From: Salpingoeca rosetta
Lineage: Eukaryota > Protista > Choanoflagellata
Assembly: GCA_033442325.1 (NCBI GenBank)
Contig: JAWQFM010000014.1
Span: 705,445-769,444, forward strand
Direction: 5' to 3'
Length of the DNA: 64,000 nt
Part shown: in pieces, positions 51,055 to 64,000 of the stretch
Layout: each line of letters starts with the position of its first letter
How positions within the stretch are numbered: position 1 is the stretch's first letter
Notes under the pieces: model-generated
The model's input: only the letters and a program-made list of their open reading frames with translations
Told to the model about the DNA's origin: nothing
Databases searched by the model: none
Translations under genes and position numbers: made by a program

Positions 51055-54000
51055 ATGATGGGGCTGCAAGGGAGGCCTGAGCCTCCCTCCTCAGCGGCAC
51101 GATGCACAGTGTGGTGGTGGCTGGGTGCCACCCTGCTCACCTCGCTAGTGCTGATGCCAGCAAGCGGTGCACACGGCACCATTGTTATCCAAGGCCCCGC
51201 CGTGCAGACACTGGAGGGCGGCTCCGCATACAGAGACGCTGCCCTGTGCAACCACGACCCCGTGAAGAAACCCTTCTGTGCCTACAAACAAGGCGGCCGA
51301 TCTGATGGCCAGGACATCACCATCACCGGCCTCCCGCTCCAGTGCAGCACAACCACCGGCGCGTGCACCGTCACCGCGCCAACGGCGCAGTGCTTCACAG
51401 ACGCAGACTGCCAAACCACGTCCCTGCTGGTCGATGGTGTTCCAGCCACAAACCCGGACGAGCCAGCCGCCATCGTCTACAACATGGGCCGCTACGTCAT
51501 CACCTTCAAGGTCAACGGTAACAGCGAATCCTGCACGTACGAGAACCCAGGCACCAAGGAGCCCGGGCAGCCCGACTGCACGCGCATCCTCTACGTCCGC
51601 GACAGAACCCCGCCGGTCATCACCCTGATCGGCGACAAGACCGTTGTCCTGCAAGGTGGCGAGGAGTTCTCCGACCCGGGCGCCACCGGCCATGACGTCG
51701 TTGACGGCGCCATGGACTACATTGCCGACCCGCCCTGCCCCGTGGAGCGGGACGGTGACGGCAACATTGTCAAGTTTATCGGCTCCCCCGGCCAAATCTG
51801 CCGCTTTGTCACCACCGCGGACCTTGTCATTGACAACAAGGAAATCAAGAACCAGACCATCTACTACATTGCCCTGGACACCACCCTCAACTACCGCCAG
51901 GTGGAGCGCACCATCGTGCTGGAAGACACCATCCCGCCCGTCATGACCCTGTGCGGGCCGCACGACGTGGTTGGCGACTCCTCGCACGAGGCCGGCCAGG
52001 AGTACATCGACGCCTGGTGCACCCCAAAGGACAACCCCTGCCTCATGCCAAAGGACCGCCAGCTCACCATGCAGGAGTGTGAGGCAAAGTCGCAGTGCAT
52101 GTGGATTGCCGGCGCATCGCTGGACGTGGACGGCTTCTGCCACCTCAAGACGAGCCCTTGCTTTGGCATCCGCGACGAGAACGACTGCAACGCAGACTCG
52201 GACTGCACCTGGTGCCCGCGCGGCGTCACCGCGTTTGACATTGTCGACGCCAACCCAACAGACGCCATCAAGGTCAACAACCCGGTTGACTCGCAGTCCC
52301 TCGGCATCTACACCATCACCTACACGCTCGCTGACGAGAACGGCAACGTGGCCACCCCGGTCACCCGCCGCGTGCGCGTGCGCGACACCACCGCGCCCGC
52401 CATCACCCTCCTCGGAGACAGCGAGGTGGAGGTGGAGGGCGCCACCTTCTACTTTGAGCGCTTCGCCACGGCCTCCGACTCCTTTGAAGGCGACATCACA
52501 AACCGCATCCTGCTCAAGGTGGACCGCCTGGGCAACCTCGACTGCACAAAGTCGCGCGGCTGCGGCGACCCCAACTTTGTGGACCCGTACGCCCCTGCCG
52601 GCACATCCTTCCTCCTCACATACTCCGTGGCAGACTCAAGCGGCAACTCAGACTCCATGACCAGCCGCGCCACGCGCGAGGTGACCATCATCGACACCAC
52701 CGCGCCCGTACTGCAGCTGCTGGGGCCAAACCCGCTCAACGTCGAAGGCGCCACCGTCTACACGGAGCCGGGGGCCACAGCCACGGACACGCTGGATGAC
52801 GACGACACGCTCTCGCAGTCGATCATCATTGGCGGCGACCGCGTCGACACCAACGCCCCGGCCTTCTCCTCCTTCAACATCTCCTACGATGTCAACGACG
52901 CAGCCGGCAACCCCGCGCGCTCGCTCTTCCGCGAGGTGGTGGTGGTCGACTCCACCCCGCCCGAAATCTCGCTCGTGGGCGACGCCAGCATCGTTGTGGA
53001 CGCCGCACGCGACTACACGGACAAGAACGTCACCGCGGAGGACTCGCTGGACGGGCCCTACCAGTTTCTGCCGCGCTTCGCCAGCCGCATCCGCAAAGTG
53101 GTGCGCAGGCTGGACGTCAGCTGCAGCGACACGGAGTACGAGACGGCGCCACAGTCGGCTCTTGTCGCTCGCTCCTGCGCCCCGCTCACCACGTGCACCG
53201 CCGGCCAGTTTGAGAGCCTTGCGCCCACGCCAACCTCCAACCGCCAGTGCCAGGGCACGCGCGCGCCGTGTGCACTTGGCCAGGACTACGAGATTCGCGC
53301 GCCCACGCCCACGTCCGACCGCGTGTGCGAGGACTGCAGCGGGGCTCGCCAGCAGCTGGCGCCACGCTCCCTCTACTCCATCATCAACCGCACAGACTGC
53401 TTTGACGTGAACCCGCCCAACCTCGTTGTCAACGTGACATGGCCTTCCATGCCCGAACAAGACGACCAACAGTCATCAGCCGCCAGCAACGACAACAGCG
53501 ACAACGGCACCACCACAACCACCATGAGCCCCAACACCACGCCACCGTTTGCCCACACCAAGGAGGTCAATGGCGTCGTGGTCACCACCATCTTCGTCAA
53601 CGATACAGTTGCTTGGTACTTTGACCCGTATCTGGTGGACATTGTTGCGCTGAACGGCTACTTCAACTCCAGCACGGTGTTCAACCGCTCAGACTACCTG
53701 CCACCAACACTGCCGCCACCGACCACGGCCGCCATGCAAAACCTCACCTCCACCTCCACCTCCACCACCACTGCTGCGACGACGACCACGAGCACCACAG
53801 CCGATGCCAACGCCACGACCACTGCCGCACCCGTGATCACCCCGCCGCCTCGCAACATCACCATCGAGCGCTTCGCCGTCGTGTTCACGGAGGCCGGCGA
53901 GTATGAGTACACGTCCACGCTCAACAGCTCCCTGCGCGGCGTTGTGCGGGTGATTGACCTGCCTGTCTTTGACAGCTGCGACCTGGAGGCCAGCCCGCTG

Positions 54001-57000
54001 TTCAACCCGAACGACACGGCCCGCGTCGTGCCGCTCAGGCAGGAGATTGCCGAGCTGGAGGCCTACGCGCACCTGTTTGCAGACGTGTCCCTTCCCTCCA
54101 TTGACGAGGACTACACGGGCCTGTGCCAGCGCATGAGCACCGTGTTCCTGCGCGACGTGCTGTTTGACTACGCCTTCCCGCCCGGCAGCGGCGCGCGTGC
54201 AGGGCAGCTGCAGCAGCTGCCGGCCAGCCTGCTGATTGAGGCCATTGACGAAGACCTGGGCAGGCTGGAGGCGCGCGCCGACGCAAACGCCGCCTGGCGC
54301 CGCGTTGTTGCCCCGCAGGTGCTCGCCGTGGGCGAGAACTCGCTCGTGCGCTTCATCCCATCGCCAAACCTGTACGGCCGCGCCACGTTCTCCTGGCGCA
54401 TGGTGGACGGCAGCCGCGAGGCCGACGACTTTCTCGGCACGGGCCAGGTGCAGATCCTGCCCGTCAACGACTCGCCCACCATCACGGGCAGCGCGGCCGT
54501 CAACTTTGTTGACGAAGACACGCCCGTGGACGACATCAACCCAACGCGTGTCGAGGACCTCATGGCCTCGGCCATGGACAACGACCGCATCACGGACGCA
54601 AACGTCACTATTGGTGCCGCCGTTGTGGCCGTCGACAACCGATTTGGCACCTGGCAGTTTGCCTGCCCGCCGCCAAACGTCAACGGCGGCAACAACAACC
54701 TGCAGTTCCAGGCGTTCCGTGGCGGTGTTGCGCCGGACACGACCGTGCACACGCTGCCTGCGCCCACGGTGGCCACGCTGCTCGGCCCAGAGTGCTTTTT
54801 GCGCTTTGTGCCGGAGACCAACTTCAACACGGAGTTTGACCTGACGGGCGAGCCGCGCCCGGCCTCGGACACGCCCACCATCCAGGTGCGCGCGTGGGAT
54901 CAGACGGGCGAGCGCATGTCCCAGCTACACGAGGGCGTGGACACCACGCAGGGCCCCGGCACACGCGGCAGCCCCTTCAGCGCCAACATCGCCACCGCAG
55001 GCGTCACCGTGTACCGCACAGATGACCCGCCCAACATCATCATCGCCCCTGGCGGCGCAGAGTACACGGCCACGTTTGCGCCGGGCTCCCTCACCCCCGT
55101 GGGCTTTGTGGACGACGACGCCCTTGCGCTGGAGACGCCCGATGGCCCGCTGCTGTCCGAAATTCGCATCCGCATCAGCAACGTGCAGGACGGCGGCGCC
55201 GAGGAGCTGCTGTACGAGACGACTGACACGGGCCTGGAGGTGACAGTTGAGCGCCCGCCCAACACCATCCTCGCCTTTATCCGCCTGGCCAACCGCGCGG
55301 AGTCGCGGCGTGACCAGCGCTTCTTCTTTGCCGTGCTCAGCTCCATGCGCTACATCCACCGCAACGTCAACGCCACCCGTGGCGAGCGCGTCGTCTCCGT
55401 GCAGGGCGTGCTTGGCCGCGTGCCGGGTGAGCCCGCCTTTGCCACCATCTCTGTCAACGCCGCCAACAACCCGCCCCTGCTAGACCTCAACCCGGCCCTG
55501 CGCGGCCACGACACCTTTGTTGTGTACGCATCCGACGGCACGCCGTCCACGCTCGCCCCTGCTGCGTCGCTCATTGACGAGGACAGCGACCCCATCACCG
55601 AGGTCACCATCACCATTGAGGGCGGCTTCCTCCCGCGCGAGGAGCTCCTGCTGCCCACAAACATGACCGGCGGGTACGTCGTCACCACCAGCGAAGAGGA
55701 CGGCAGCATCACCATCCGCCCAGCCCCGGGCGTGGACGCGGGCGCGCTTGATGCAGACAAGCTGGGAAGCCTGCTGCGCCAACTCGAGTACGTGTACCCG
55801 GCGCCACTGCCGCCGCCGCCGCCCGCCACCACGACGATGCCCGCTGCCAACGCCACCACAACCGTGCCCAACAACGCAACCGTGACCAGCACCGTTGCGG
55901 CGAACATGACGACGACATCAACCACCACCACGACCACAACAACAACAACGACCACAACCACAACCACAACCACGCCCATGCCCATGCTCATGACCACGCG
56001 GCGCGTTGTGCTCACCGTGTCGGACGGGCGCGACAGCACGTCCTCGCGCGTGCACATCTCGCCCAGCATGGCCGAGTCCCCGCCCTACCTCGACCTGAAC
56101 GGCGAGCGGCCGGGCGTGGACACCGCCGTCACCTATTCCGAGAGCCAGGGCCTGCTTGCCCTGGCAGACTCTCCATTTGTGCTTGTGCCCGGCGGCCAGC
56201 CGCTCGCGGAGGTGCGCGTGCGCATCGCCTCGAGCCCAGACTGCCTCAACGAGCGCCTGGTGCTGCCGGACGAGATTGCAAATTCGCACTCGTTCAACTT
56301 TGCCAACTTTGACGTGTCCACGGGCAAGCTCGTGTTCCGCGGCAGTGCCACAACGGGCACGTGGGCAAACGCCATCTCCTCGGTTGCCTTCGTCTCGGAC
56401 GCAGCCACCCTCTCTGGCACGTCGCGCACCGTCGTGTTTGAGATTGTGACGGATACGGGCGTGGTGTCCAACCCGGCGCGGGTGATCATCTCGCTCACGG
56501 CGTCCAACGACGCGCCCGTGCTCAACCCCTTTGGCGGCCCGCTCTCGCTGTCCGTGACGCAGGACGTCTCCGACTGGGACAACGCTGGCTGGCCCGTGCG
56601 TTCGCTGATTGACGAGGCGCAGCCGCTGTCGTACCGCTCGCGCGCCGAGCTGCTGTCCTGCGGCACCGCCGGATGCACGCACGCCGCGGCGCAGGGCCAG
56701 TGTGCCGCCAAGGGCCTGCAGCTGTGCACGCACGCACAGGTGTGGCAGGCGTGGCCCAACTTCCCCCACCCGAACGCAGACGGCACCGGTGGCAACGAGG
56801 GCGGCGACGACGTGGTCGCCTGGCTCTCCACGCCGCAGAACGGCACGCAGAACCTCCCCTCCCTCTCTGCGCGCAGCATGCAAGTGGGCAACGTGCTGCT
56901 GGAGGATGCCTCAGCGCTGGACTCTGAGCACGCGCAGGTGCTGCACCTGTACCCGAACGCCGACGAGCCCCGCTTTGCCTTTGCCCTCAAGCGCGACAGC

Positions 57001-60000
57001 CGGCTCGGCCTCCCCCTGTGGGCGGCCTGCTGCGAGCTGCCAGAGAGCGAAGCGCCGGGCACCGCCGGCCTTGAGGCCGTGGCCGTGTTCCGCACGGCGG
57101 GCGTGACGGGCCGCGTCACCTTCCGTCAGCGCGCCCCGGGCGCCACCACGCACGTGCACTTCAACCTGCGCGGCGTCGGGCGGCAGCTGCGCGAGTACAG
57201 CATCTACGCCGGCCAGACGGCCGCGCCCACCTCTGCGGACCGCTGCGACACGGTCGGCTCCATCTTTGACCCGCTCAACCTGGGCCGGTGCGAGCAAGGG
57301 GAGGACGACGCGGCATCCTGTGCCATTGGCGACCTGTCCCGCCGCGTGGGCCAGTTTGCTTCGGACCAGTCGTACTTTGACCGCTACGTCACGGACGCCA
57401 ACTTGCCGCTCTTTGGCGACAACAGCATCATCGGGCGCTCGTTTGCCGTGCTGCGCAACGGCCGCCCCAGCGTGTGCGTGCCCATTGTGGTGAGTCGGCC
57501 GTCGCGCCAGACATATGCCACGGTTGAGATGGACGACGAGGTGCGCGGGTCCGTGGCCATGCAGCAGTTTGCCTCGCAGGACGGCACCCTCACCCAGACG
57601 CTGGTGACCACCAACCTGCGCCTGGTCAACCCGCCCTCGCTCGCGCCGCAGATTGTGGACTGGAGCCTGGTGTCCAGTGCGGACGGCACGTGCGCGGCCG
57701 CCACGCCGCTGTTTGATGTTCCGCTCCGCGTGCGCCAGCCCATGTTCACCTCCACCGCCCAGGTGTGGGCGCCCACCACCAGCGCGTGGGTGCAGCCGCT
57801 CGAGGCGCAGGCAAACCAGGGCAACGCCTCCCTCCCCGTGGCGTGGTCCACACTCGCCCTCGACCTTGAGCAAGACTCGCTGTGCCTGGATGCCATGGCC
57901 CAGCTCAACCCGCTCGTGCTGGCAGGCAGCGACGGCGACGCGGGGAGCGCCATGCCACGCCTGTGCGTGTACGTGGACGCGGACGCCAGCGCTTCAGCGT
58001 CAACGAGCGCTGGCACGTGCGATGCCGTGTGGGGCCAAGCAGGAGCGCGCCTGCGTGCTGCGTGGTGCCAGCCACCGACGTGCACGGCGGATGGGTGGTG
58101 CAGTGTGCGGGACGCATGCGTGTCGGCGTCGACTGCGTTTGGCATTGCCACACCGGGTGCTGGTACGTCCGGGAGCGCAGCTGAGGAGGCCAGCGACGCA
58201 GCCAAGGTGGCGGCGTTTATGTCTGCCGCCGTTGCTCTGCACCCGGGCACCGCCGCCGCCACAACGGCACACGAGCGCACCAGCCTGTACACGGCGCGCC
58301 GCACCATTGCCAACACCAGCACGCTGTGTGCTGGGTTCGTGCCTGGGGCGGAAGCGTGCCCCGCCAACGCGGATGCGTGCGAGGCCGGCGACTGGACGGC
58401 CCGCTACGGGCGCCTCACCCTGCAGCCCATCAACACGCGCTTCATGTCCGCGCGCAACCTGCCGTTGCTGTCGAGCAACGACGTGTCCTCTGTGCTGCCG
58501 CCCCCCGCCTTTGCCTCCACAACGCCGTCCAAGGCCTCGCTGCGCGTGCAGCGGCCAGACGGCACGTACTCGTGCGCGCCCGTGAAGGAGCAGGTGAAGC
58601 CGCGCGAGGTGATTGCCCGCGTCGACATCAACGGCATTCAGGGCTTTGTCACCTTCTATCAGGCGTCCCCAGACGCGGCCACGCAGGTGAAGGTGGAGCT
58701 GCGCGGCACGGGCCTGGCCCAGGACAACAGCCTCATCGGCGCAAAGATGACCATCACCAGCAACGCCGTGAACCTGCAGGGCCTGTCCATGTCGGAGGTG
58801 TGCAGCGATCTCGGCGATTTGTTCCACCCGGACAACACCACCCTCACTGGCACGTGCAGCGCAGGCAACCTGGCCTCCTGCAGCGTGGGCGACCTGGCTG
58901 GGAAGCATGGCGCGTTGCCCAACCAGCCGCCCTACGAACAATACTTTGAGGACAACGACCTGCCCCTGTTTGGCAAGCGCAGTATTGTGGGTCGCTCCAT
59001 TCGCCTGATGCAAGGCTCCACGCTGCTTGCGTGTGCGCCCATCCTGTACGTGGACCCCGTGCGCGTTGCACGTGCCACGCTGCACTCGCCCGTGCACGGG
59101 TACGTGACGGCGTTTCAGCTGCGCGACGAGGCCGACAAGACGCTGGGTGATGCCAGCGGCACCCACGCTGCAGAGACCATCTTCATCGTGGACGTGGCGC
59201 GCTCCGATGTCAACGCGACGCAGGGCGCCCTGGACGTCGACTGGGCCGTGCGCGAGTACGACAACGCGTGCACGTGCCAGCGGCTTGGCCCCGCCCTTGC
59301 GCTGACCACGACCGGTGAGGCCGTGGGCGACCTGTCTTCGGAGGTGGGCGGCGTGCGCATCCCAGGCAGCGGCCAGGCCAGCGCCCGCCAGGTGTTTGCC
59401 TCCACGCGCCTGTCGCTGTCCATGCTCTTGAACCAGTCGGTGTACTTCTCCAACGACGCGTGCGCGGTGTTCCGCGAGGTGCTGCCTGTTGAGCTGGTGG
59501 CCTCGTTTGACCGCGAAGATGTGCACGGCCACGTCACGCTGCGCCAGGACCACATGCTGGCGCTGACGCAGGTGACGGTGACGCTGGCTGGGCTGGAGGA
59601 CCGCGGCAACGGCATTCGCGTGGAGGACCGGCGCCTGCTGCAGACACTTGACGACGAGGGCACCCCGCAGCTCGACTGCAACAGCGGCTCCACCATCTTT
59701 GATCCCCTGAAAATTGGCCGCCTGTGCGACAACCGCCTGTTTGCCTCCTCATCAGACGTGTGCGCGCCCGGTGACCTGAGCGGCCGGCACGGCGGCGTGG
59801 ACCGCCTGCCATCTGCCCGCAACGTCTTTGACGACTACTACCTGAACCTGTACGGCCCCAGCTCGCTGGCGTCGCGCGGGCTGGTCATCACGGGCTCCAC
59901 TGTGCTGCAGCAGCTGCGCAACCGCCCCTGGATCTGCGCCAACCTCGACGCAACGGAGCCCGCCGCCGCAACGCAGGCCGCTGCCGTCTTCTCCCCGGCG

Positions 60001-63000
60001 CAGCCAGAGCAGGCGCGCCTGCACGCCGCACACCAGCGGCCCGGCGACGTCGCGGACGGCATTGACGGGCAGGGCGACGGCCGCGGCATTCTGTCTGGCT
60101 GGCTGCACTTTTCCAAGCCCACGACCGCCGCCACCGCCGTAGACGACGACGACAGCGCCAGCCCGCCCACGCTCGTGTCCTCGTACCTGCAGCTGAGCGG
60201 CAGCGCGTGGAGCGTGGTTGACTGGTACGTGAGTGCCTCGGAGACGTGCGACGATGCCATTGCCGCGGCTGGCGGCAGCACGCGCGAGGACGTGTTCAAC
60301 CCGCACGGCGTGGCAACCACAAACACCTCTGGGTACGATGACGACTGCGGCACAGGCCGCAACCAGCTGCGGTGCGCAGCGGGCGACCTTGCCAACAAGC
60401 TTGGCACGGACGGCCTCGCTGCGTCGTCCTCACCATCCTTTGGTCGCGCTGACGTGAGCACGCAGCTGACGGGCGCGGCCACCATCATCGGGCGGCCGCT
60501 TGTGGTTGTGGCGCAGCACGGGACGACCCAGCAGAAGGAGGCGCTGTGCACCGTGGTGCGGTCGTACGGCGGCCCCAAGGTGAGCGACATTGACACGCCC
60601 CGCGAGCGGCTGGGCATTGCCGTTGTGGCGACGACCAGCGACCACGGCACGTGGCAGCTCTACCGCAACGAGGCGCAGGGGTGGGTGGATCTGCCGGAGG
60701 TGGCCTTCACCAACGCCCTGCACCTGCGTGCGTCGGACACGAACCGGCTGCGCTTCCGCCCCGAGACGCACTTTAGCGGCGACGAGGCGTGCGGCGTGTG
60801 CCCGACGCCGCGCCGCAAGAGCTGCGTGCCCTGCGCGCTCAACAGGACGGTGGGCAGCCTGACCTTCTACGGGTGGGACGGCAGCAACGTGGTGGCGGAC
60901 GGGGTGCGCTTCTCGCTCGCGCTGGCCGGTTCGTCGAGCTCCTACAGCAACCAGTCCAGCACGGTGCTGGTGCAGGTGCAGGACGCCAAGGTGAACGAGA
61001 CGGCGCCGCACGGCACGTCCTACGAGGTGCTGTTTGATGTGCAGGACAACGTGGGCAACCAGGCTGAGACGGTGACGCGCATGATCCGCGTGGAGGACAG
61101 CACGGACCCCGTCATCACGCTTCGCGGCGACGCCATGCTGAAGCACGAGGCTGCCACGCCATATGTTGACGACGGCGCGACGGCCTTTGATGCCCACGAC
61201 CTTTGGGTGAGCAACAACGTGTTTGTGGAAGGCATTGACGGTGACGTGCCGGCGTACCCGACGCCGCCCGCGGCCATCTCCGTGCTGTCATGCGACCGGG
61301 AGAACGACCCCCGCCTGGCCCTGCCCACGTACCAGGACGAGTACGGCCCGCTGTACACGTGCTCGCTGCCGCAGGACATGGCGCAGGAGCCGTTCTTCTG
61401 CGTGGAGCGCAGCGAGCCTGCGGCCACCGACCCGCTTCTCCAGCGCAACGGCGGCGGCATTCGCCTGCAGGGCAGTGGCCGCGTCAACGGCTACACCATG
61501 CCGTGCACGCTGACGGGCAGCCGCCTCACGTGCTTCTCCAGCGACACGGCCGCCCAGAACCTGCAGTACCCAGGCACGGCCACGGAGCGGCACCTGGCCT
61601 GCGCTGCGCGCGTGCGCACGCCGCTGTGCCAGTACCACGACTACATCCTTGCCACGCGCCACCGCTATCCCGTGAGCGGGGAGGTGGACGTGTACGCGCC
61701 GGACGGCAGCACGTTCACGCTCAACTACACGGTGGCGGATGCTGCAGGCAACTCGCACCTGGTGCAGCGGCAGGTGGAGATTGAGGACACGCGGCCGCCC
61801 GTGCTGCGCCCCTTCAACCAGGGCAACACGCTCGAGTTTGTCCGAGAGAACGGCGTGGCGGCGGAGCCGTACAACCCGCACGACTTTGCGTGCGCGTCGA
61901 CCATCGCCAGCCGCTTCACGGAGGCCAACGCCAGCATGATCCACTGCGTGTCTGCGCTTGACACGCTGGAGGGGGACCTGAGCTGCGACGTGACGACGTC
62001 CGTGTACGTGTTTGGCCCCGGCAGCGGCATGCAGGAGCAGCTGACACGCTTCCGCCGCGCAGCAGAGGTGCACAGCAGCGAGGAGCTGTTTGTGCAGGTG
62101 AGCGCGTCCTGCGTCAACTGGAACTCGTTTATCGAGCTGCCCTTCAACACGTCATCGACGCCGACCGACCCCATCTGCTTTGATGCGATGGGCACGCTGG
62201 ACCTGGTCAACGCAACAGCGCCGCTCAACACATCGTACCTCATCACGTACACGGTGCAGGACCACTCGCGCCAGCAGCACCGCGTGAGCACGCAGCGGCT
62301 GCTGACGCTGGTGGACGAGCGGCCGCCGCAGGTGCGCATCCTGAGCGACCCCGTGCTGTTTGTGGACTACCTGACCAACTTCACGGACGCCATGGCCAAG
62401 CAAGGGCTGGCCGTGTTTGACGAGCACGATGGCGAGATCACCACGGCCATCCAGGTGGAGTCTAATGTGAACACGGCCGTGCCGGGCAACTACACCGTCT
62501 CGTACACAGCACAGGACCTGTCTGGCAACCGCGGCGTGACGGCGACGCGCATTGTGGTGGTGCGGCCGCCGGCGGAGGTGCAGCTCATGCGCAACCAGAG
62601 CACCGTCTCGTACGGCCTCACGCTCCGGTACATGCGCCCCTCCGTGTTCAACACGTTTGACGGCCACACCACGTTCCGCTGGGCGCTGTGGTACTCTGTG
62701 CGCAACTTCAGCGACGCCTTCTCCGACCTGCGGCGCAGCGACATTGTGCGCCTGGACGCGCGCGGTGTTTCCACGCCCGCTCCCCGCGCCCGCCGCGACG
62801 TGACGGCAGAGCCCGAGAACACGGCCGTGTCGTTCTCGCTGGCCACCCCGTGCGACCGCGCGGAGGAGCTGGCGCAGGTGCTTGGCCTCGTGGTGCGACA
62901 GGGGGTGCTGCTGTCCAACCTCAGCGTGGCGGCGCCGCTCACGTACGACAACGTGTTCCCGAGCGTGACGGGCCAGCCTGCGCTGGGCCTGGGCATGTGC

Positions 63001-64000
63001 CCCGTGGTGACAACAACCACCACGACGACGACAACCACGACGACGACCACGGACAACTCGACGACGGTGGACCCGACGCTCAACAGCTCGTCGGGCGGCT
63101 CCAACGACGCGGTCATCATCGTGGCTATTGTCATCCCCGTGCTGCTGCTCATCATCGCGCTGGTTGTGTTTGTGTACCGCGCGACAAAGCCGAAGAACCG
63201 CCTGGACGCGCTGCTGCAGTACCAGGAGGCGCACGAGCTGTCCCACTACGGTGGCGTGCCTGGCGGCCCCGCCGGCGACAAGGGCCAGACGATGGTGCGT
63301 GTCGGCAAGTACAACGTGGAGGTTGACACCAGCCCGCAGCTGCAGAACGAGGACGTGTATGCGTTCCACACGCCCAAGAACATGACGCCCGGGCAGGCCA
63401 AGGCACAGGCGACGGCGAAGAAGGCGCCGCCGCCGCCGCCAGAGGACATTTACGAGGACGTGGACCACAAGAAGTCCACGCTGCGGCGGCCAGGGGATGC
63501 GCTGCAGCCCAGCACTGTGTTTATCGAGAGCGCGCCGGAGACGTACGAGGCGTTTGACTCGAGCAACCCGGCATTCTCCAGCGACGCTTCGCTGCGGCCC
63601 ACAGGCTTCCAGCACACGGATGACGACATCTACGATGGCGTGGACGGCGGCAACATGGGCTTCAGCTCGCACGACAAGTCGTCCAGGACGGGCGACCTGG
63701 CCAAGGTCACGGAGGAACTGTACGAGGTGCAAGGAAAGGGGGCGACGCTGCGCAAGAAGCCGCCTGCCCCACCGACGGTACCGACTCCCGTGGCACCAGC
63801 GCCCCTGGCACCGACAAGTTTCCAGCCCACGGAGGACGATATCTACGATGGCGTGGATGTTGCTGCTCCAGCTGGCTTCAGCTCGCATGACAAGTCTTCT
63901 CGCACGGGTGATTTGGCCAAGGTGACGGAAGAGCTGTATGAGGTGCAGGGCAAAGCGTCCACACTTCGCAAGAAGCCACCGGCACCTGCGCCAGTACCCG
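51055..64000 (+). CDS. Giant single-pass (type I) cell-surface receptor/adhesion protein, >4315 aa, intronless in this window, 3' end beyond the window
   Basis: Frame +1 open from ATG 51055 to the window end (translated by eye; absent from the ORF track because there is no stop). Signal peptide (VWWWLGATLLTSLVLMPASGA); ~9 DUF5011/HYR-like Ig repeats (D[TS]xPPVITLxG...Y.V.D.AGN...R.V.V); TNFR-like Cys repeats (PTPTSDRVC); a cupredoxin-like domain; bacterial cadherin-like repeats (VNDSP, NNPPLLDLN, SNDAPVL); a Link-like module; six SOD-fold repeats; a SEA-like domain with RARR; a Thr stalk; TM 63109-63177 (AVIIVAIVIPVLLLIIALVVFVY); a Tyr/Pro-rich tail. Strong GC3 codon bias and no dinucleotide microsatellites. 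Confidence 0.93.
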   Translation, partial: MMGLQGRPEPPSSAARCTVWWWLGATLLTSLVLMPASGAHGTIVIQGPAVQTLEGGSAYRDAALCNHDPVKKPFCAYKQGGRSDGQDITITGLPLQCSTTTGACTVTAPTAQCFTDADCQTTSLLVDGVPATNPDEPAAIVYNMGRYVITFKVNGNSESCTYENPGTKEPGQPDCTRILYVRDRTPPVITLIGDKTVVLQGGEEFSDPGATGHDVVDGAMDYIADPPCPVERDGDGNIVKFIGSPGQICRFVTTADLVIDNKEIKNQTIYYIALDTTLNYRQVERTIVLEDTIPPVMTLCGPHDVVGDSSHEAGQEYIDAWCTPKDNPCLMPKDRQLTMQECEAKSQCMWIAGASLDVDGFCHLKTSPCFGIRDENDCNADSDCTWCPRGVTAFDIVDANPTDAIKVNNPVDSQSLGIYTITYTLADENGNVATPVTRRVRVRDTTAPAITLLGDSEVEVEGATFYFERFATASDSFEGDITNRILLKVDRLGNLDCTKSRGCGDPNFVDPYAPAGTSFLLTYSVADSSGNSDSMTSRATREVTIIDTTAPVLQLLGPNPLNVEGATVYTEPGATATDTLDDDDTLSQSIIIGGDRVDTNAPAFSSFNISYDVNDAAGNPARSLFREVVVVDSTPPEISLVGDASIVVDAARDYTDKNVTAEDSLDGPYQFLPRFASRIRKVVRRLDVSCSDTEYETAPQSALVARSCAPLTTCTAGQFESLAPTPTSNRQCQGTRAPCALGQDYEIRAPTPTSDRVCEDCSGARQQLAPRSLYSIINRTDCFDVNPPNLVVNVTWPSMPEQDDQQSSAASNDNSDNGTTTTTMSPNTTPPFAHTKEVNGVVVTTIFVNDTVAWYFDPYLVDIVALNGYFNSSTVFNRSDYLPPTLPPPTTAAMQNLTSTSTSTTTAATTTTSTTADANATTTAAPVITPPPRNITIERFAVVFTEAGEYEYTSTLNSSLRGVVRVIDLPVFDSCDLEASPLFNPNDTARVVPLRQEIAELEAYAHLFADVSLPSIDEDYTGLCQRMSTVFLRDVLFDYAFPPGSGARAGQLQQLPASLLIEAIDEDLGRLEARADANAAWRRVVAPQVLAVGENSLVRFIPSPNLYGRATFSWRMVDGSREADDFLGTGQVQILPVNDSPTITGSAAVNFVDEDTPVDDINPTRVEDLMASAMDNDRITDANVTIGAAVVAVDNRFGTWQFACPPPNVNGGNNNLQFQAFRGGVAPDTTVHTLPAPTVATLLGPECFLRFVPETNFNTEFDLTGEPRPASDTPTIQVRAWDQTGERMSQLHEGVDTTQGPGTRGSPFSANIATAGVTVYRTDDPPNIIIAPGGAEYTATFAPGSLTPVGFVDDDALALETPDGPLLSEIRIRISNVQDGGAEELLYETTDTGLEVTVERPPNTILAFIRLANRAESRRDQRFFFAVLSSMRYIHRNVNATRGERVVSVQGVLGRVPGEPAFATISVNAANNPPLLDLNPALRGHDTFVVYASDGTPSTLAPAASLIDEDSDPITEVTITIEGGFLPREELLLPTNMTGGYVVTTSEEDGSITIRPAPGVDAGALDADKLGSLLRQLEYVYPAPLPPPPPATTTMPAANATTTVPNNATVTSTVAANMTTTSTTTTTTTTTTTTTTTTTTPMPMLMTTRRVVLTVSDGRDSTSSRVHISPSMAESPPYLDLNGERPGVDTAVTYSESQGLLALADSPFVLVPGGQPLAEVRVRIASSPDCLNERLVLPDEIANSHSFNFANFDVSTGKLVFRGSATTGTWANAISSVAFVSDAATLSGTSRTVVFEIVTDTGVVSNPARVIISLTASNDAPVLNPFGGPLSLSVTQDVSDWDNAGWPVRSLIDEAQPLSYRSRAELLSCGTAGCTHAAAQGQCAAKGLQLCTHAQVWQAWPNFPHPNADGTGGNEGGDDVVAWLSTPQNGTQNLPSLSARSMQVGNVLLEDASALDSEHAQVLHLYPNADEPRFAFALKRDSRLGLPLWAACCELPESEAPGTAGLEAVAVFRTAGVTGRVTFRQRAPGATTHVHFNLRGVGRQLREYSIYAGQTAAPTSADRCDTVGSIFDPLNLGRCEQGEDDAASCAIGDLSRRVGQFASDQSYFDRYVTDANLPLFGDNSIIGRSFAVLRNGRPSVCVPIVVSRPSRQTYATVEMDDEVRGSVAMQQFASQDGTLTQTLVTTNLRLVNPPSLAPQIVDWSLVSSADGTCAAATPLFDVPLRVRQPMFTSTAQVWAPTTSAWVQPLEAQANQGNASLPVAWSTLALDLEQDSLCLDAMAQLNPLVLAGSDGDAGSAMPRLCVYVDADASASASTSAGTCDAVWGQAGARLRAAWCQPPTCTADGWCSVRDACVSASTAFGIATPGAGTSGSAAEEASDAAKVAAFMSAAVALHPGTAAATTAHERTSLYTARRTIANTSTLCAGFVPGAEACPANADACEAGDWTARYGRLTLQPINTRFMSARNLPLLSSNDVSSVLPPPAFASTTPSKASLRVQRPDGTYSCAPVKEQVKPREVIARVDINGIQGFVTFYQASPDAATQVKVELRGTGLAQDNSLIGAKMTITSNAVNLQGLSMSEVCSDLGDLFHPDNTTLTGTCSAGNLASCSVGDLAGKHGALPNQPPYEQYFEDNDLPLFGKRSIVGRSIRLMQGSTLLACAPILYVDPVRVARATLHSPVHGYVTAFQLRDEADKTLGDASGTHAAETIFIVDVARSDVNATQGALDVDWAVREYDNACTCQRLGPALALTTTGEAVGDLSSEVGGVRIPGSGQASARQVFASTRLSLSMLLNQSVYFSNDACAVFREVLPVELVASFDREDVHGHVTLRQDHMLALTQVTVTLAGLEDRGNGIRVEDRRLLQTLDDEGTPQLDCNSGSTIFDPLKIGRLCDNRLFASSSDVCAPGDLSGRHGGVDRLPSARNVFDDYYLNLYGPSSLASRGLVITGSTVLQQLRNRPWICANLDATEPAAATQAAAVFSPAQPEQARLHAAHQRPGDVADGIDGQGDGRGILSGWLHFSKPTTAATAVDDDDSASPPTLVSSYLQLSGSAWSVVDWYVSASETCDDAIAAAGGSTREDVFNPHGVATTNTSGYDDDCGTGRNQLRCAAGDLANKLGTDGLAASSSPSFGRADVSTQLTGAATIIGRPLVVVAQHGTTQQKEALCTVVRSYGGPKVSDIDTPRERLGIAVVATTSDHGTWQLYRNEAQGWVDLPEVAFTNALHLRASDTNRLRFRPETHFSGDEACGVCPTPRRKSCVPCALNRTVGSLTFYGWDGSNVVADGVRFSLALAGSSSSYSNQSSTVLVQVQDAKVNETAPHGTSYEVLFDVQDNVGNQAETVTRMIRVEDSTDPVITLRGDAMLKHEAATPYVDDGATAFDAHDLWVSNNVFVEGIDGDVPAYPTPPAAISVLSCDRENDPRLALPTYQDEYGPLYTCSLPQDMAQEPFFCVERSEPAATDPLLQRNGGGIRLQGSGRVNGYTMPCTLTGSRLTCFSSDTAAQNLQYPGTATERHLACAARVRTPLCQYHDYILATRHRYPVSGEVDVYAPDGSTFTLNYTVADAAGNSHLVQRQVEIEDTRPPVLRPFNQGNTLEFVRENGVAAEPYNPHDFACASTIASRFTEANASMIHCVSALDTLEGDLSCDVTTSVYVFGPGSGMQEQLTRFRRAAEVHSSEELFVQVSASCVNWNSFIELPFNTSSTPTDPICFDAMGTLDLVNATAPLNTSYLITYTVQDHSRQQHRVSTQRLLTLVDERPPQVRILSDPVLFVDYLTNFTDAMAKQGLAVFDEHDGEITTAIQVESNVNTAVPGNYTVSYTAQDLSGNRGVTATRIVVVRPPAEVQLMRNQSTVSYGLTLRYMRPSVFNTFDGHTTFRWALWYSVRNFSDAFSDLRRSDIVRLDARGVSTPAPRARRDVTAEPENTAVSFSLATPCDRAEELAQVLGLVVRQGVLLSNLSVAAPLTYDNVFPSVTGQPALGLGMCPVVTTTTTTTTTTTTTTDNSTTVDPTLNSSSGGSNDAVIIVAIVIPVLLLIIALVVFVYRATKPKNRLDALLQYQEAHELSHYGGVPGGPAGDKGQTMVRVGKYNVEVDTSPQLQNEDVYAFHTPKNMTPGQAKAQATAKKAPPPPPEDIYEDVDHKKSTLRRPGDALQPSTVFIESAPETYEAFDSSNPAFSSDASLRPTGFQHTDDDIYDGVDGGNMGFSSHDKSSRTGDLAKVTEELYEVQGKGATLRKKPPAPPTVPTPVAPAPLAPTSFQPTEDDIYDGVDVAAPAGFSSHDKSSRTGDLAKVTEELYEVQGKASTLRKKPPAPAPVP
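57073..60561 (+). repeat. Six tandem Cu/Zn-SOD-fold (CSRP-type) protein repeats within the giant ORF
   Basis: Repeats at ~57073-57489, 57508-58590, 58606-59049, 59062-59478, 59491-59949, 59974-60561 share G.V.F.Q...T.V, C...F[DN]P, C..GDL..[KR]HG and LPLFG..SI[IV]GRS..C..I. Confidence 0.82.
63601..64000 (+). repeat. Cytoplasmic tandem ~71-72-aa repeat (DDIYDGV...FSSHDKSSRTGDLAKVTEELYEVQGK..TLRKKPPAP), at least 2 copies
   Basis: IYDG at 63628 and 63841; the Tyr of ELYEV at 63721 and 63937. Confidence 0.95.

What the first reader, a model, noticed from the sequence alone, without database searches (positions are those of the whole stretch)
51055..64000. Unlisted >4300-aa intronless receptor joining bacterial-type adhesin repeats, animal-type modules and a phosphotyrosine tail
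Seen in sequence: one open frame with a signal peptide, a ~4000-aa mosaic ectodomain, a single TM helix and a tail with repeated acidic-Tyr motifs. No catalytic domain appears within the window. Established knowledge: choanoflagellates have expanded Tyr-kinase/SH2 signalling and HYR/cadherin-like surface proteins. Inference: a non-enzymatic (or downstream-kinase) receptor coupling recognition of surfaces, bacterial prey or matrix to Src/SH2/SH3 signalling. This is the best candidate for an undescribed system in the window.
Basis: partly seen in the sequence, partly recalled or inferred. Interest (0 to 1): 0.85.

Follow-up and report, generated by a model that had tools for sequence, protein, structure and literature searches.

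The report
Giant kinase-less SH2 scaffold receptor
A real, transcribed, single-exon gene of the choanoflagellate Salpingoeca rosetta encodes a surface protein of more than 4,300 residues whose tyrosine-motif tail ends, in its full-length relatives, in a phosphotyrosine-reading SH2 domain and not a kinase; it is a giant, apparently unannotated variant of a receptor class first sketched in a 2016 paper.

Summary
It is transcribed from the + strand and shows no splice joints over its last 6 kb. It is colinear end to end with three orthologues. The frame runs into a 2,011-base run of N, so its 3' end is unread.

Layout: signal peptide; DUF5011/HYR Ig repeats; TNFR-like Cys module; mucin runs; weak cadherin-like stretch; six SOD-fold repeats lacking the copper and zinc histidines; more DUF5011; one TM helix; Cys-free acidic-Tyr/Pro tail.

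Two complete orthologues (S. infusionum transcript, 4,247 aa; a marine metagenome contig, 4,546 aa in one uninterrupted ORF) continue 140-212 residues further. Both end in an SH2 domain with intact phosphotyrosine-binding arginines and have no kinase.

At least five smaller S. rosetta genes share the plan "ectodomain, TM, Tyr-motif tail, C-terminal SH2". One matches PTSG_05573 of Shigeno-Nakazawa 2016 (PMC5043372), so the class is published.

New here: the giant size, the dead-SOD array, and a 27-residue tail core whose two copies differ at 14 codons, all synonymous.

Verdict: kinase-less adhesion/scaffold receptor, a new variant of a known kind. First readers of this scan also noted kinase-less SH2 receptors elsewhere in this genome.

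The parts
51055..64000 (+). Single open frame of 4,315 codons, with no stop inside the window. The CDS continues into a 2,011-base N run.
   Evidence: colinear with orthologues P0001, P0081 and P0006
51055..51168 (+). Start codon and predicted signal peptide (aa 1-38). The hydrophobic core is at about aa 19-36 and is followed by ASG|AHG.
   Evidence: read from sequence; aligns with the N-terminal hydrophobic leaders of three orthologues. No SignalP run was available.
51169..51606 (+). Membrane-distal head (aa 39-184) with conserved cysteines. No family assigned.
   Evidence: 71% mean column identity among 4 orthologues over aa 30-300, which also includes the first DUF5011 repeat; the fold model was unusable at pLDDT 36.8
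51607..53094 (+). First block of DUF5011/HYR-type Ig repeats (aa 185-680).
   Evidence: PF16403 E 2.4e-35 with 4 stretches; HYR weak. This is the most conserved part of the ectodomain.
53122..53340 (+). TNFR/NGFR-like cysteine-rich module (aa 690-762).
   Evidence: PF00020 24.1 bits, E 4.9e-5, below the curated cut-off of 29.4: tentative
53452..53859 (+). Ser/Thr-rich mucin-like stretch (aa 800-935).
   Evidence: read from sequence; mostly absent from the S. infusionum orthologue
54052..56664 (+). About 870 residues of unassigned beta-rich modules with 'NDxP'-type boundaries, possibly cadherin-like. Includes a poly-Thr run at 55909-55974.
   Evidence: Cadherin_5 23.8 bits, below the cut-off of 26.5; Atlas feature hits to bacterial cadherin-like clusters at only 0.83; no Pfam hit in the orthologues
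57079..60519 (+). Six tandem SOD-fold repeats. D1 57079-57486. D2 57520-58485, split by an insert of about 210 aa. D3 58612-59043. D4 59059-59469. D5 59497-59946. D6 60022-60519. All lack the Cu and Zn histidines.
   Evidence: PF00080 over its cut-off; iterative HMM finds six repeats in all 4 orthologues; ligand columns; the D3 model matches Cu-only SOD5 with TM 0.73, E 3.5e-9
60940..62664 (+). Second block of DUF5011/HYR-type Ig repeats (aa 3296-3870), with Cys-rich inserts.
   Evidence: PF16403 E 3.4e-23 with 4 stretches; Big_3_2 35.5 bits
62665..63051 (+). Juxtamembrane module of unknown family (aa 3871-3985) followed by a 14-residue poly-Thr stalk.
   Evidence: conserved in the orthologues (P0006 aligns here); no Pfam hit
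63106..63177 (+). Single transmembrane helix (aa 4018-4041).
   Evidence: the only hydrophobic window in the protein reaching the threshold, peak mean 3.65; conserved in 4 orthologues
63178..63999 (+). Cytoplasmic tail as far as it can be read (aa 4042-4315). It has 10 Tyr, 6 of them in [DE][DE][ILVM]Y, 12% Pro and no Cys. The window holds two copies of a 67-72-aa repeat.
   Evidence: tail aligned with the orthologues
63658..63738 (+). Copy 1 of the 27-residue core (GFSSHDK...TEELYEVQGK).
   Evidence: 14 codons differ from copy 2, all synonymous; the core is conserved in S. infusionum and in the metagenome orthologue
63874..63954 (+). Copy 2 of the 27-residue core.
63751..63771 (+). RKKPPAP, a class-I SH3-type proline motif. 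It recurs at 63967-63987; KKAPPPP lies at 63418-63438.
   Evidence: regex on the sequence; the SH3 consensus is from general knowledge

Best explanation
This is the single-exon gene of a giant type-I membrane glycoprotein, predicted at about 4,450-4,700 aa once the gap is closed. It has no enzymatic domain.

The ectodomain is a long, glycosylated, disulfide-rich chain of Ig-like (DUF5011/HYR), Cys-rich, possibly cadherin-like and six metal-site-less SOD-fold modules. That is the build of an adhesion or recognition stalk.

Proposed mechanism (inferred): engagement or clustering of the ectodomain lets a cytoplasmic tyrosine kinase, probably of Src type, phosphorylate the acidic Tyr motifs. The phosphotyrosines and the RxxPxxP sites then recruit SH2 and SH3 proteins. 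The receptor's own C-terminal SH2 domain docks onto a phosphotyrosine, either on the kinase or on neighbouring tails, which would hold the complex together.

Shown: the ORF, its transcription, the topology features, the orthology, purifying selection on the tail core, and an SH2 with intact pTyr-binding residues in the orthologues.

Inferred: that the S. rosetta copy also ends in an SH2 domain, that the tail is phosphorylated, the partners, and the ligand.
For: The ORF and its topology are established. It is transcribed from the + strand without splice joints over 58001-64000.

The ORF is colinear with three orthologues: 62% identity to the 4,546-aa metagenome ORF, 50% to Barroeca monosierra, 41-43% to S. 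infusionum.

Both complete orthologues end 'tail repeats, Pro-rich stretch, SH2...PVAP stop'. PF00017 scores 24.7 bits against a cut-off of 21, and PF00017 is also listed for P0081. The best solved relatives are the SH2 domains of SHP2, RasGAP and Syk. The alphaA Arg, the FLVR Arg and the betaD His-His are invariant in 9 family SH2 domains.

The tail is under constraint. The two copies of the 27-aa core differ at 14 codons, all synonymous. [DE][DE][ILVM]Y covers 6 of 10 tail Tyr against 0 of 96 tyrosines before the end of the TM helix, with the same contrast in the orthologues.

The class exists independently of this gene. Five S. rosetta open frames have PF16403 or TNFR repeats, one TM, a Tyr-rich tail and 1-2 C-terminal SH2 domains. 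No PF07714 match is listed beside them. Every inspected database hit of at least 900 aa whose SH2 lies near its C-terminus has one TM upstream of it.

The literature adds that pYDVP peptides of PTSG_05573 bind a choanoflagellate Crk SH2 domain in ITC (PMC5043372).
Against: The S. rosetta 3' end lies in an N run, so its SH2 domain is inferred, not seen.

There is no phosphorylation, binding or localisation data for this protein.

The SH2 match in S. infusionum only just reaches the Pfam cut-off when the whole protein is scored (21.0 against 21).

Most of the ectodomain has no assignable family, so the 'adhesion/recognition' reading rests on its build alone.
Confidence: 0.72

Rival explanations
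1. It is a structural cell-coat, adhesion or theca-anchoring glycoprotein. On this view the tail tyrosines work unphosphorylated as YxxPhi sorting or endocytosis signals and not as a phosphotyrosine scaffold.
For: The ectodomain is huge and mucin-bearing, with 44 N-glycosylation sequons. Several tail motifs also fit YxxPhi (YEDV, YDGV, YEAF). No phosphorylation data exist.
Against: Complete orthologues carry a C-terminal SH2 with intact pTyr-binding residues. Acidic residues at -3/-2 and an aliphatic residue at -1 are typical of tyrosine-kinase substrates and are not needed for AP-2 sorting (general knowledge). The 27-aa core is constrained well beyond a four-residue sorting signal.
Confidence: 0.13
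2. The S. rosetta copy is a true receptor tyrosine kinase or phosphatase whose catalytic domain is hidden in the 2,011-base gap.
For: The gap could hold up to about 670 codons, which is more than the 140-212 residues the orthologues need. S. rosetta has many receptor kinases.
Against: The 62%-identical complete orthologue and the S. infusionum transcript both stop right after the SH2 domain, with no kinase. Read joints that 'go back 201-203 bases', together with mixed variants, show that the gap holds further tail repeats. None of the five paralogues has a kinase match listed beside it.
Confidence: 0.03
3. The six SOD-fold repeats make it a membrane-anchored extracellular superoxide dismutase, that is, a CSRP-type enzyme.
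For: PF00080 matches over its cut-off. The D3 model is closest to the Cu-only SOD5. Six repeats is the usual number in animal CSRPs (PMC13017621).
Against: The positions equivalent to H46, H48, H63 and H120 (Cu) and H71 and H80 (Zn) hold no histidine in the repeats of S. rosetta and S. infusionum that could be aligned there, apart from one His at the H46 position of S. infusionum D1. For D1 this holds in all four orthologues.
Confidence: 0.02
4. It is not a functional gene: a chance open frame in GC-rich DNA, or a decaying pseudogene.
For: High G+C (0.63-0.70) favours long stop-free frames; many opposite-strand frames of 200-580 aa overlap it.
Against: The frame has 4,315 stop-free codons, against 77-78 stops in the other + frames. 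It is transcribed from the correct strand. Full-length orthologues exist in at least three other choanoflagellate sources. The repeat core shows only synonymous divergence.
Confidence: 0.01

Closest known systems
Pre-metazoan transmembrane YxxP/SH2 proteins of Shigeno-Nakazawa et al. 2016 (S. rosetta PTSG_05573, PTSG_12435 and PTSG_12436; M. brevicollis A9VAL3 and A9V449; PMC5043372)
   Same: Single-pass membrane protein with a DUF5011 (PF16403) ectodomain, a repeated Tyr motif in a Pro-rich tail and no kinase. There are one or two C-terminal SH2 domains; for this gene the SH2 is seen only in the orthologues. The SH2 domains share a sub-family signature: EHH, a conserved Cys, and an L-x-x-P-V end.
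   Different: This protein is 3-4 times larger and carries six SOD-fold repeats. The readable S. rosetta tail has no YxxP; it uses [DE][DE][ILV]Y-D/E-x-V/Q motifs and a 27-aa conserved core instead. No gene model of 2,373-7,551 aa for it turned up in the protein collection.
CSRP, the Cu-only SOD repeat proteins of animals and Capsaspora (review PMC13017621)
   Same: Tandem array of Cu-only-SOD-like beta-barrels, six of them, extracellular. The conserved disulfide cysteines are kept in most repeats. The closest solved structure is SOD5.
   Different: No repeat keeps a Cu site, whereas CSRPs keep several. Linkers and inserts are long; D2 is split by about 210 aa. The array is embedded in a 4,000-aa ectodomain with a TM helix and a signalling tail, whereas CSRPs are secreted or GPI-anchored proteins made of SOD-like repeats.
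BCAR1/p130Cas substrate domain and transmembrane adaptors of animals (LAT, PAG/Cbp, nephrin, Draper/MEGF10); from general knowledge and PMC5043372
   Same: Works like them on paper: a non-catalytic scaffold with many tyrosines that cytoplasmic kinases phosphorylate so that SH2/SH3 adaptors assemble. YDxV-like and YExV-like motifs resemble Nck/SHP2-type sites.
   Different: No sequence homology was shown. To my knowledge, animal scaffolds of this kind do not carry their own SH2 domain in a transmembrane protein.
Choanoflagellate receptor tyrosine kinases with HYR/TNFR/Ephrin_rec_like ectodomains (general knowledge; PMC3584944 and PMC10263333 seen only as titles and abstracts)
   Same: The same kit of extracellular modules, one TM helix, and the pTyr signalling context.
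   Different: No kinase domain in the window or in the complete orthologues.
Bacterial large repetitive DUF5011 surface proteins
   Same: The repeats score best on PF16403. Identity to bacterial giants is about 30% over aa 150-700.
   Different: This gene has eukaryotic gene context, a signal peptide and TM topology, an SH2-type tail, and orthologues in choanoflagellates. DUF5011 is widespread in this genome, so there is no sign of recent transfer.

Membership tests
Choanoflagellate DUF5011-TM-Tyr-repeat-SH2 receptor class (PMC5043372) | Single transmembrane segment with an extracellular N-terminus | tested here: met
   One hydrophobic window at aa 4013-4045. There are 91 Cys and 44 sequons before it and 0 Cys after it.
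Choanoflagellate DUF5011-TM-Tyr-repeat-SH2 receptor class (PMC5043372) | DUF5011 (PF16403) domain in the ectodomain | tested here: met
   PF16403 E 5.4e-48 over the whole protein, in two blocks.
Choanoflagellate DUF5011-TM-Tyr-repeat-SH2 receptor class (PMC5043372) | Several YxxP motifs in the cytosolic region | tested here: not met
   None of the 10 readable tail tyrosines is followed by Pro at +3. The motifs are YEDV, YDGV, YEVQ, YEAF and YAFH. Repeated Tyr motifs of another kind are present.
Choanoflagellate DUF5011-TM-Tyr-repeat-SH2 receptor class (PMC5043372) | C-terminal SH2 domain(s) | tested here: inconclusive
   Present in the orthologues P0001 and P0081. The S. rosetta end lies in an N run. 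An own-genome search finds only paralogues.
CSRP (Cu-only SOD repeat protein) | Four to twelve tandem SOD-like beta-barrel repeats | tested here: met
   Six repeats in each of 4 orthologues. The D3 model matches SOD5 with TM 0.73. The weak repeats D2, D4 and D6 are supported only in part.
CSRP (Cu-only SOD repeat protein) | Intact Cu site (four His) in at least some repeats | tested here: not met
   No repeat has the H46/H48/H63/H120 set.
CSRP (Cu-only SOD repeat protein) | Secreted or GPI-anchored protein made of SOD-like repeats joined by short linkers | tested here: not met
   The array is embedded between other modules. D2 carries an insert of about 210 aa. The protein has a TM helix and a cytoplasmic tail.
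Receptor tyrosine kinase | Cytoplasmic protein-tyrosine-kinase domain | tested here: not met
   No PF07714 or Pkinase hit in the window ORF or in the complete S. infusionum orthologue, and no kinase family is listed among the precomputed Pfam hits of P0081. No PF07714 match is listed near the locus. The unread gap leaves a small doubt.
SH2 domain (PF00017), for the orthologues' C-terminus | Profile match over the curated cut-off, plus the pTyr-binding alphaA Arg, betaB5 Arg (FLVR) and betaD His | tested here: met
   24.7 bits against a cut-off of 21. PDB hits to SHP2, RasGAP and Syk SH2 domains, E 6e-7. R20, R39 and H58-H59 are invariant in 9 sequences.
Classical cadherin | Cadherin (PF00028) repeats with Ca-binding motifs | tested here: not met
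   Only a sub-threshold Cadherin_5 hit of 23.8 bits against a cut-off of 26.5, and no hit in the orthologues.

The most novel reading that the evidence does not exclude
The receptor is a self-reading phosphotyrosine scaffold. The pTyr reader (SH2) is fused to its own multi-site substrate, so kinase-triggered head-to-tail SH2-pTyr binding between neighbouring tails would polymerise or condense these giant receptors at a contact site. That would be a way to build adhesion or prey-capture signalling platforms without receptor kinases, integrin-Cas complexes or separate adaptors. It would be specific to the closest unicellular relatives of animals. The six metal-less SOD barrels would serve as a rigid spacer or as a new binding surface.
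Probability: 0.2. Interest if true: 0.75.

Novelty: new variant of a known kind. Interest (0 to 1): 0.55.

Why it matters
Choanoflagellates have as many tyrosine kinases and SH2 domains as animals do, yet very few substrates or surface inputs are known.

This gene is conserved in at least four choanoflagellate sources and is transcribed. No gene model of comparable length for it turned up in the protein collection, probably because the assembly breaks inside its tail repeat.

It couples a 4,000-residue ectodomain to a strongly constrained, Src-substrate-like tail and, in its relatives, to its own SH2 domain. To my knowledge that arrangement is not found in animal transmembrane proteins.

S. 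rosetta can be edited genetically. Tail, SH2 and ectodomain mutants could therefore test directly how phosphotyrosine signalling was wired to the cell surface before animals arose.

The gene also shows a second fate of the Cu-only SOD repeat array: loss of all metal sites and reuse as receptor modules.

Tried and rejected
1. Reading the 3' end from the genome failed. G000:C14:769445-771455 is N, and there is a second N run 633 bases further on.
2. An own-genome search with the orthologue's last 218 aa found only paralogous SH2 genes.
3. A fold of the N-terminal head from a 4-sequence alignment gave pLDDT 36.8 and was not used.
4. The D3-D4 fold had mean pLDDT 55. Only the D3 half is trusted; D4 stays weak.
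5. Complex prediction of the S. infusionum SH2 with its own unphosphorylated 51-aa tail core gave no answer (score 0.01). This counts neither for nor against binding.
6. The search for homologous proteins on the SOD region (aa 2005-3165) came back blank although known orthologues exist. This is a word-sampling artefact and carries no information.
7. Pfam on the unassigned segments of two orthologues gave nothing significant. An Xlink hit at E 0.043 was ignored. Atlas feature hits of 0.83 are leads only.
8. The 2008 PNAS papers on the M. brevicollis pTyr machinery are not held, so I cannot say whether they list receptor-type SH2 proteins.
9. Recent bacterial transfer of the DUF5011 repeats was rejected for lack of support.
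10. The receptor tyrosine kinase, active SOD and chance-ORF readings were rejected, as set out under the rival explanations.
Full report
OBSERVATION

window:51055-63999(+) translates into 4,315 residues without a stop. The other two + frames carry 77 and 78 stops. An in-frame stop sits directly upstream of the ATG ATG at 51055. G+C rises from about 0.55 to 0.63-0.70 at that point.

The window is G000:C14:705445-769444 of a 55.4-Mb, 68-contig assembly. A paralogue I found carries exactly five [ED]MYDVPR[SN] sites among about 10 YxxP motifs. That is what Shigeno-Nakazawa et al. describe for S. rosetta PTSG_05573, so the identification is sound.

The frame does not end in the window. The next 2,011 bases read N, followed by a 632-base island with a (TG)n run, followed by another 1,704 N.

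IS IT A REAL, INTRONLESS GENE?

Stranded RNA-seq raw reads of two 2026 runs cover all 30 bins of 58001-64000. Nearly all have the first mate on the - strand, which means RNA from the + strand in the usual libraries. No joint skips any sequence.

The only joints 'go back' 201-203 bases inside 63655-63999. They come with mixed variants at 63612-63954 and with fragmented DNA contigs. This is the signature of additional tail-repeat copies that the reference lacks. The N run is therefore most simply an assembly break in a tandem repeat (inference).

A transcript-derived ORF of Salpingoeca infusionum (P0001, 4,247 aa, 'complete') aligns colinearly with the whole frame at 42.6% identity. The largest S. 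rosetta-only insertion is 43 aa.

A marine metagenome contig (L016, 16.2 kb) holds a complete 4,546-aa orthologue (P0081) as one uninterrupted ORF in genomic DNA. It is 62% identical and colinear.

A Barroeca monosierra model (P0006, 4,041 aa, 50% identical) breaks off inside the first tail repeat.

No protein of 2,373-7,551 aa from S. rosetta itself turned up with either the tail or aa 150-700 as the search region.

ANATOMY

- Signal-peptide-like leader at aa 1-38, aligned with the orthologues' leaders.
- A conserved Cys-containing head with no family assigned. Its fold model was unusable.
- DUF5011/PF16403 Ig repeats in two blocks, aa 185-680 and aa 3296-3870 (E 5e-48 overall; HYR weak).
- A sub-threshold TNFR Cys module.
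- Mucin-like runs.
- About 870 residues with only sub-threshold cadherin-like signals.
- Six SOD-fold repeats, described below.
- A juxtamembrane module of unknown family and a poly-Thr stalk.
- One TM helix at aa 4018-4041.
- The cytoplasmic tail.

The ectodomain has 91 Cys and 44 N-x-S/T sequons, while the tail has no Cys. This fits the proposed topology.

THE SOD-FOLD ARRAY

An iterative HMM seeded with aa 2005-2150 finds six repeats in all four orthologues: strong D1, D3 and D5 alternating with weak D2, D4 and D6. D2 is split by an insert of about 210 aa.

Against a solved Cu/Zn SOD (1to4), D1 has Y, G, I, Q, A and L at the positions of H46, H48, H63, H71, H80 and H120. Only D83 and Cys57 are kept. 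The other alignable repeats of S. rosetta and S. infusionum likewise lack these histidines, apart from one His at the H46 position of S. infusionum D1. They keep the GDL motif, the disulfide cysteines in most repeats, and an extra Cys pair in the former Zn loop. For D1 the losses hold in all four orthologues.

A moderate-confidence model of D3 matches the Cu-only SOD5 of Candida albicans best (TM 0.73, E 3.5e-9).

The array is therefore a metal-less derivative of the Cu-only SOD/CSRP lineage described in PMC13017621. It is not an enzyme.

In a six-frame search, PF00080 matched nowhere else in this genome.

THE TAIL

Of the 10 readable tail tyrosines, 6 lie in [DE][DE][ILVM]Y, against 0 of 96 tyrosines before the end of the TM helix. 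The metagenome orthologue shows 9 of 15 against 0 of 87. Acidic residues at -3/-2 with an aliphatic residue at -1 is the classic preference of Src-type kinases (general knowledge).

There are three [RK]xxPxxP sites.

The window holds two copies of a 67-72-aa unit. Their 27-residue core (GFSSHDK...TEELYEVQGK) differs at 14 codons, all synonymous. The duplication is therefore old and the peptide is under strong purifying selection. The core is nearly the same in S. infusionum and in the metagenome species.

A looser form of the core (GF-x-x-HD-x3-R ... [IL]YE) recurs upstream of the same kind of SH2 domain in other metagenomic proteins. One of these is a 1,642-aa DUF5011 receptor with five copies.

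WHAT LIES BEYOND THE WINDOW

Both complete orthologues continue for 140 residues (metagenome) or 212 residues (S. infusionum) and end 'Pro-rich stretch, SH2...PVAP, stop'.

The SH2 assignment rests on several results:
- PF00017 scores 24.7 bits against a cut-off of 21 on the tail fragment, and 21.0 on the whole protein.
- PF00017 is listed as a precomputed hit on P0081 and on P0004.
- phmmer hits the SH2 domains of SHP2, RasGAP, Syk and ZAP-70 (best E 6e-7).
- The alphaA Arg, the FLVR Arg and the betaD His-His are invariant across nine family members.

No kinase or phosphatase domain is present. I therefore predict, without having seen it, that the S. rosetta protein also ends in an SH2 domain inside the gap.

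THE CLASS

Searching the S. rosetta genome with the orthologue's C-terminus and with PF16403 hit the same open frames. I cut out five such frames and examined them. Each shows extracellular PF16403/HYR or TNFR repeats, one strong TM, a Tyr- and Pro-rich tail of 360-730 aa, and one or two SH2 domains close to the stop. No PF07714 match is listed beside them, apart from a convergent neighbour gene on C23.

An exhaustive HMMER search with the S. infusionum juxtamembrane, tail and SH2 segment gave 75 hits. Every inspected hit of at least 900 aa whose SH2 lies near its C-terminus has one TM upstream of the SH2. Ectodomains where scanned are PF16403, TNFR, Ephrin_rec_like or PAN. The hits include M. 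brevicollis XP_001750724.

The architecture has been published. Shigeno-Nakazawa et al. 2016 found PTSG_05573, PTSG_12435 and PTSG_12436, and A9VAL3 and A9V449, as transmembrane proteins with cytosolic YxxP repeats. Three of the five have C-terminal SH2-like domains and two have DUF5011. The authors showed by ITC that pYDVP peptides of PTSG_05573 bind the M. brevicollis Crk SH2 domain.

The gene studied here is not among those five. It has no YxxP in its readable tail, and it adds the giant ectodomain with the SOD-fold array.

MECHANISM

Most likely (0.72), this is a non-catalytic adhesion/recognition receptor that acts as a membrane scaffold. Ectodomain engagement would lead to phosphorylation of the acidic Tyr motifs by a cytoplasmic kinase. 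SH2 and SH3 proteins would then be recruited, with the receptor's own SH2 docking to a pTyr on the kinase or on neighbouring tails.

The aliphatic residue after the betaD His-His and the SHP2-like best hits hint at a pY-x-x-hydrophobic preference, which YDGV, YEDV and YEAF would fit. This is speculation from general knowledge.

A complex prediction of the SH2 with the unphosphorylated core gave no answer.

The rivals are a sorting-signal or structural protein (0.13), a kinase hidden in the gap (0.03), an active SOD (0.02) and a non-gene (0.01). They are weighed in their own sections.

NOVELTY AND SCORE

The kind is known from one 2016 paper and, at catalogue level, from surveys noting the very diverse SH2 architectures of M. 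brevicollis (PMC4342544).

New here:
- A conserved giant family, apparently unannotated in S. rosetta.
- The fusion with a six-fold metal-less SOD array.
- A distinct and strongly constrained tail core.

This makes it a new variant of a known kind. Interest is 0.55.

Noticed in passing
L004:1-4347 (G000:C14:769445-773791): Two N runs (2,011 and 1,704 bases) flank a 632-base readable island that holds a long (TG)n microsatellite. The window ends exactly at the first N. Read joints suggest that the first gap is a collapsed tandem repeat of the tail unit.
   Followed up: partly
L012:3170-6589:+ (G000:C13): An open frame with PF16403, one TM, about 10 YxxP motifs including five [ED]MYDVPR[SN] sites, and SH2-like sequence at the C-terminus. 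It matches the published description of PTSG_05573 and thereby ties G000 to S. rosetta.
   Followed up: yes
L010:3270-6851:+, L011:2093-5698:+, L013:2767-7122:-, L014:2785-7500:-: Four further kinase-less 'ectodomain, TM, Tyr-tail, C-terminal SH2' frames. The ectodomains are PF16403 in three and six TNFR repeats in L014. Their 5' exons were not modelled.
   Followed up: partly
G000:C23:863777-864580:+: A tyrosine-kinase-like gene (PF07714, 134 bits) lies convergent to, and about 2.7 kb from, the 3' end of the TNFR-SH2 receptor frame of L014. A functional pairing is possible but untested.
   Followed up: no
whole genome G000: PF00080 (Cu/Zn SOD) matched only this ORF in the six-frame search. 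A canonical SOD1 gene may be absent, or may have been missed because short exons score poorly.
   Followed up: no
P0006 (Barroeca monosierra model, 4,041 aa): The orthologue's gene model stops inside the first tail repeat, in the same kind of place where the S. rosetta assembly breaks. The repeat seems to defeat short-read assemblies in general.
   Followed up: partly
P0035 (M. brevicollis XP_001750724, 2,295 aa): This receptor-type SH2 protein model starts with a JmjC/cupin domain ahead of Ephrin_rec_like and DUF5011 repeats. It is probably two neighbouring genes fused by the annotation.
   Followed up: no
P0004/P0081 cluster: The 4,546-aa orthologue is filed in a 90%-identity cluster under a 207-aa representative. 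Length-windowed searches therefore cannot find it; it surfaced only through the cluster listing.
   Followed up: yes
window:63801: G>A is seen in more than half of the RNA reads of both runs and in an older contig set, but not in the DNA contigs laid there. It most likely reflects reads from unassembled repeat copies and not RNA editing.
   Followed up: no
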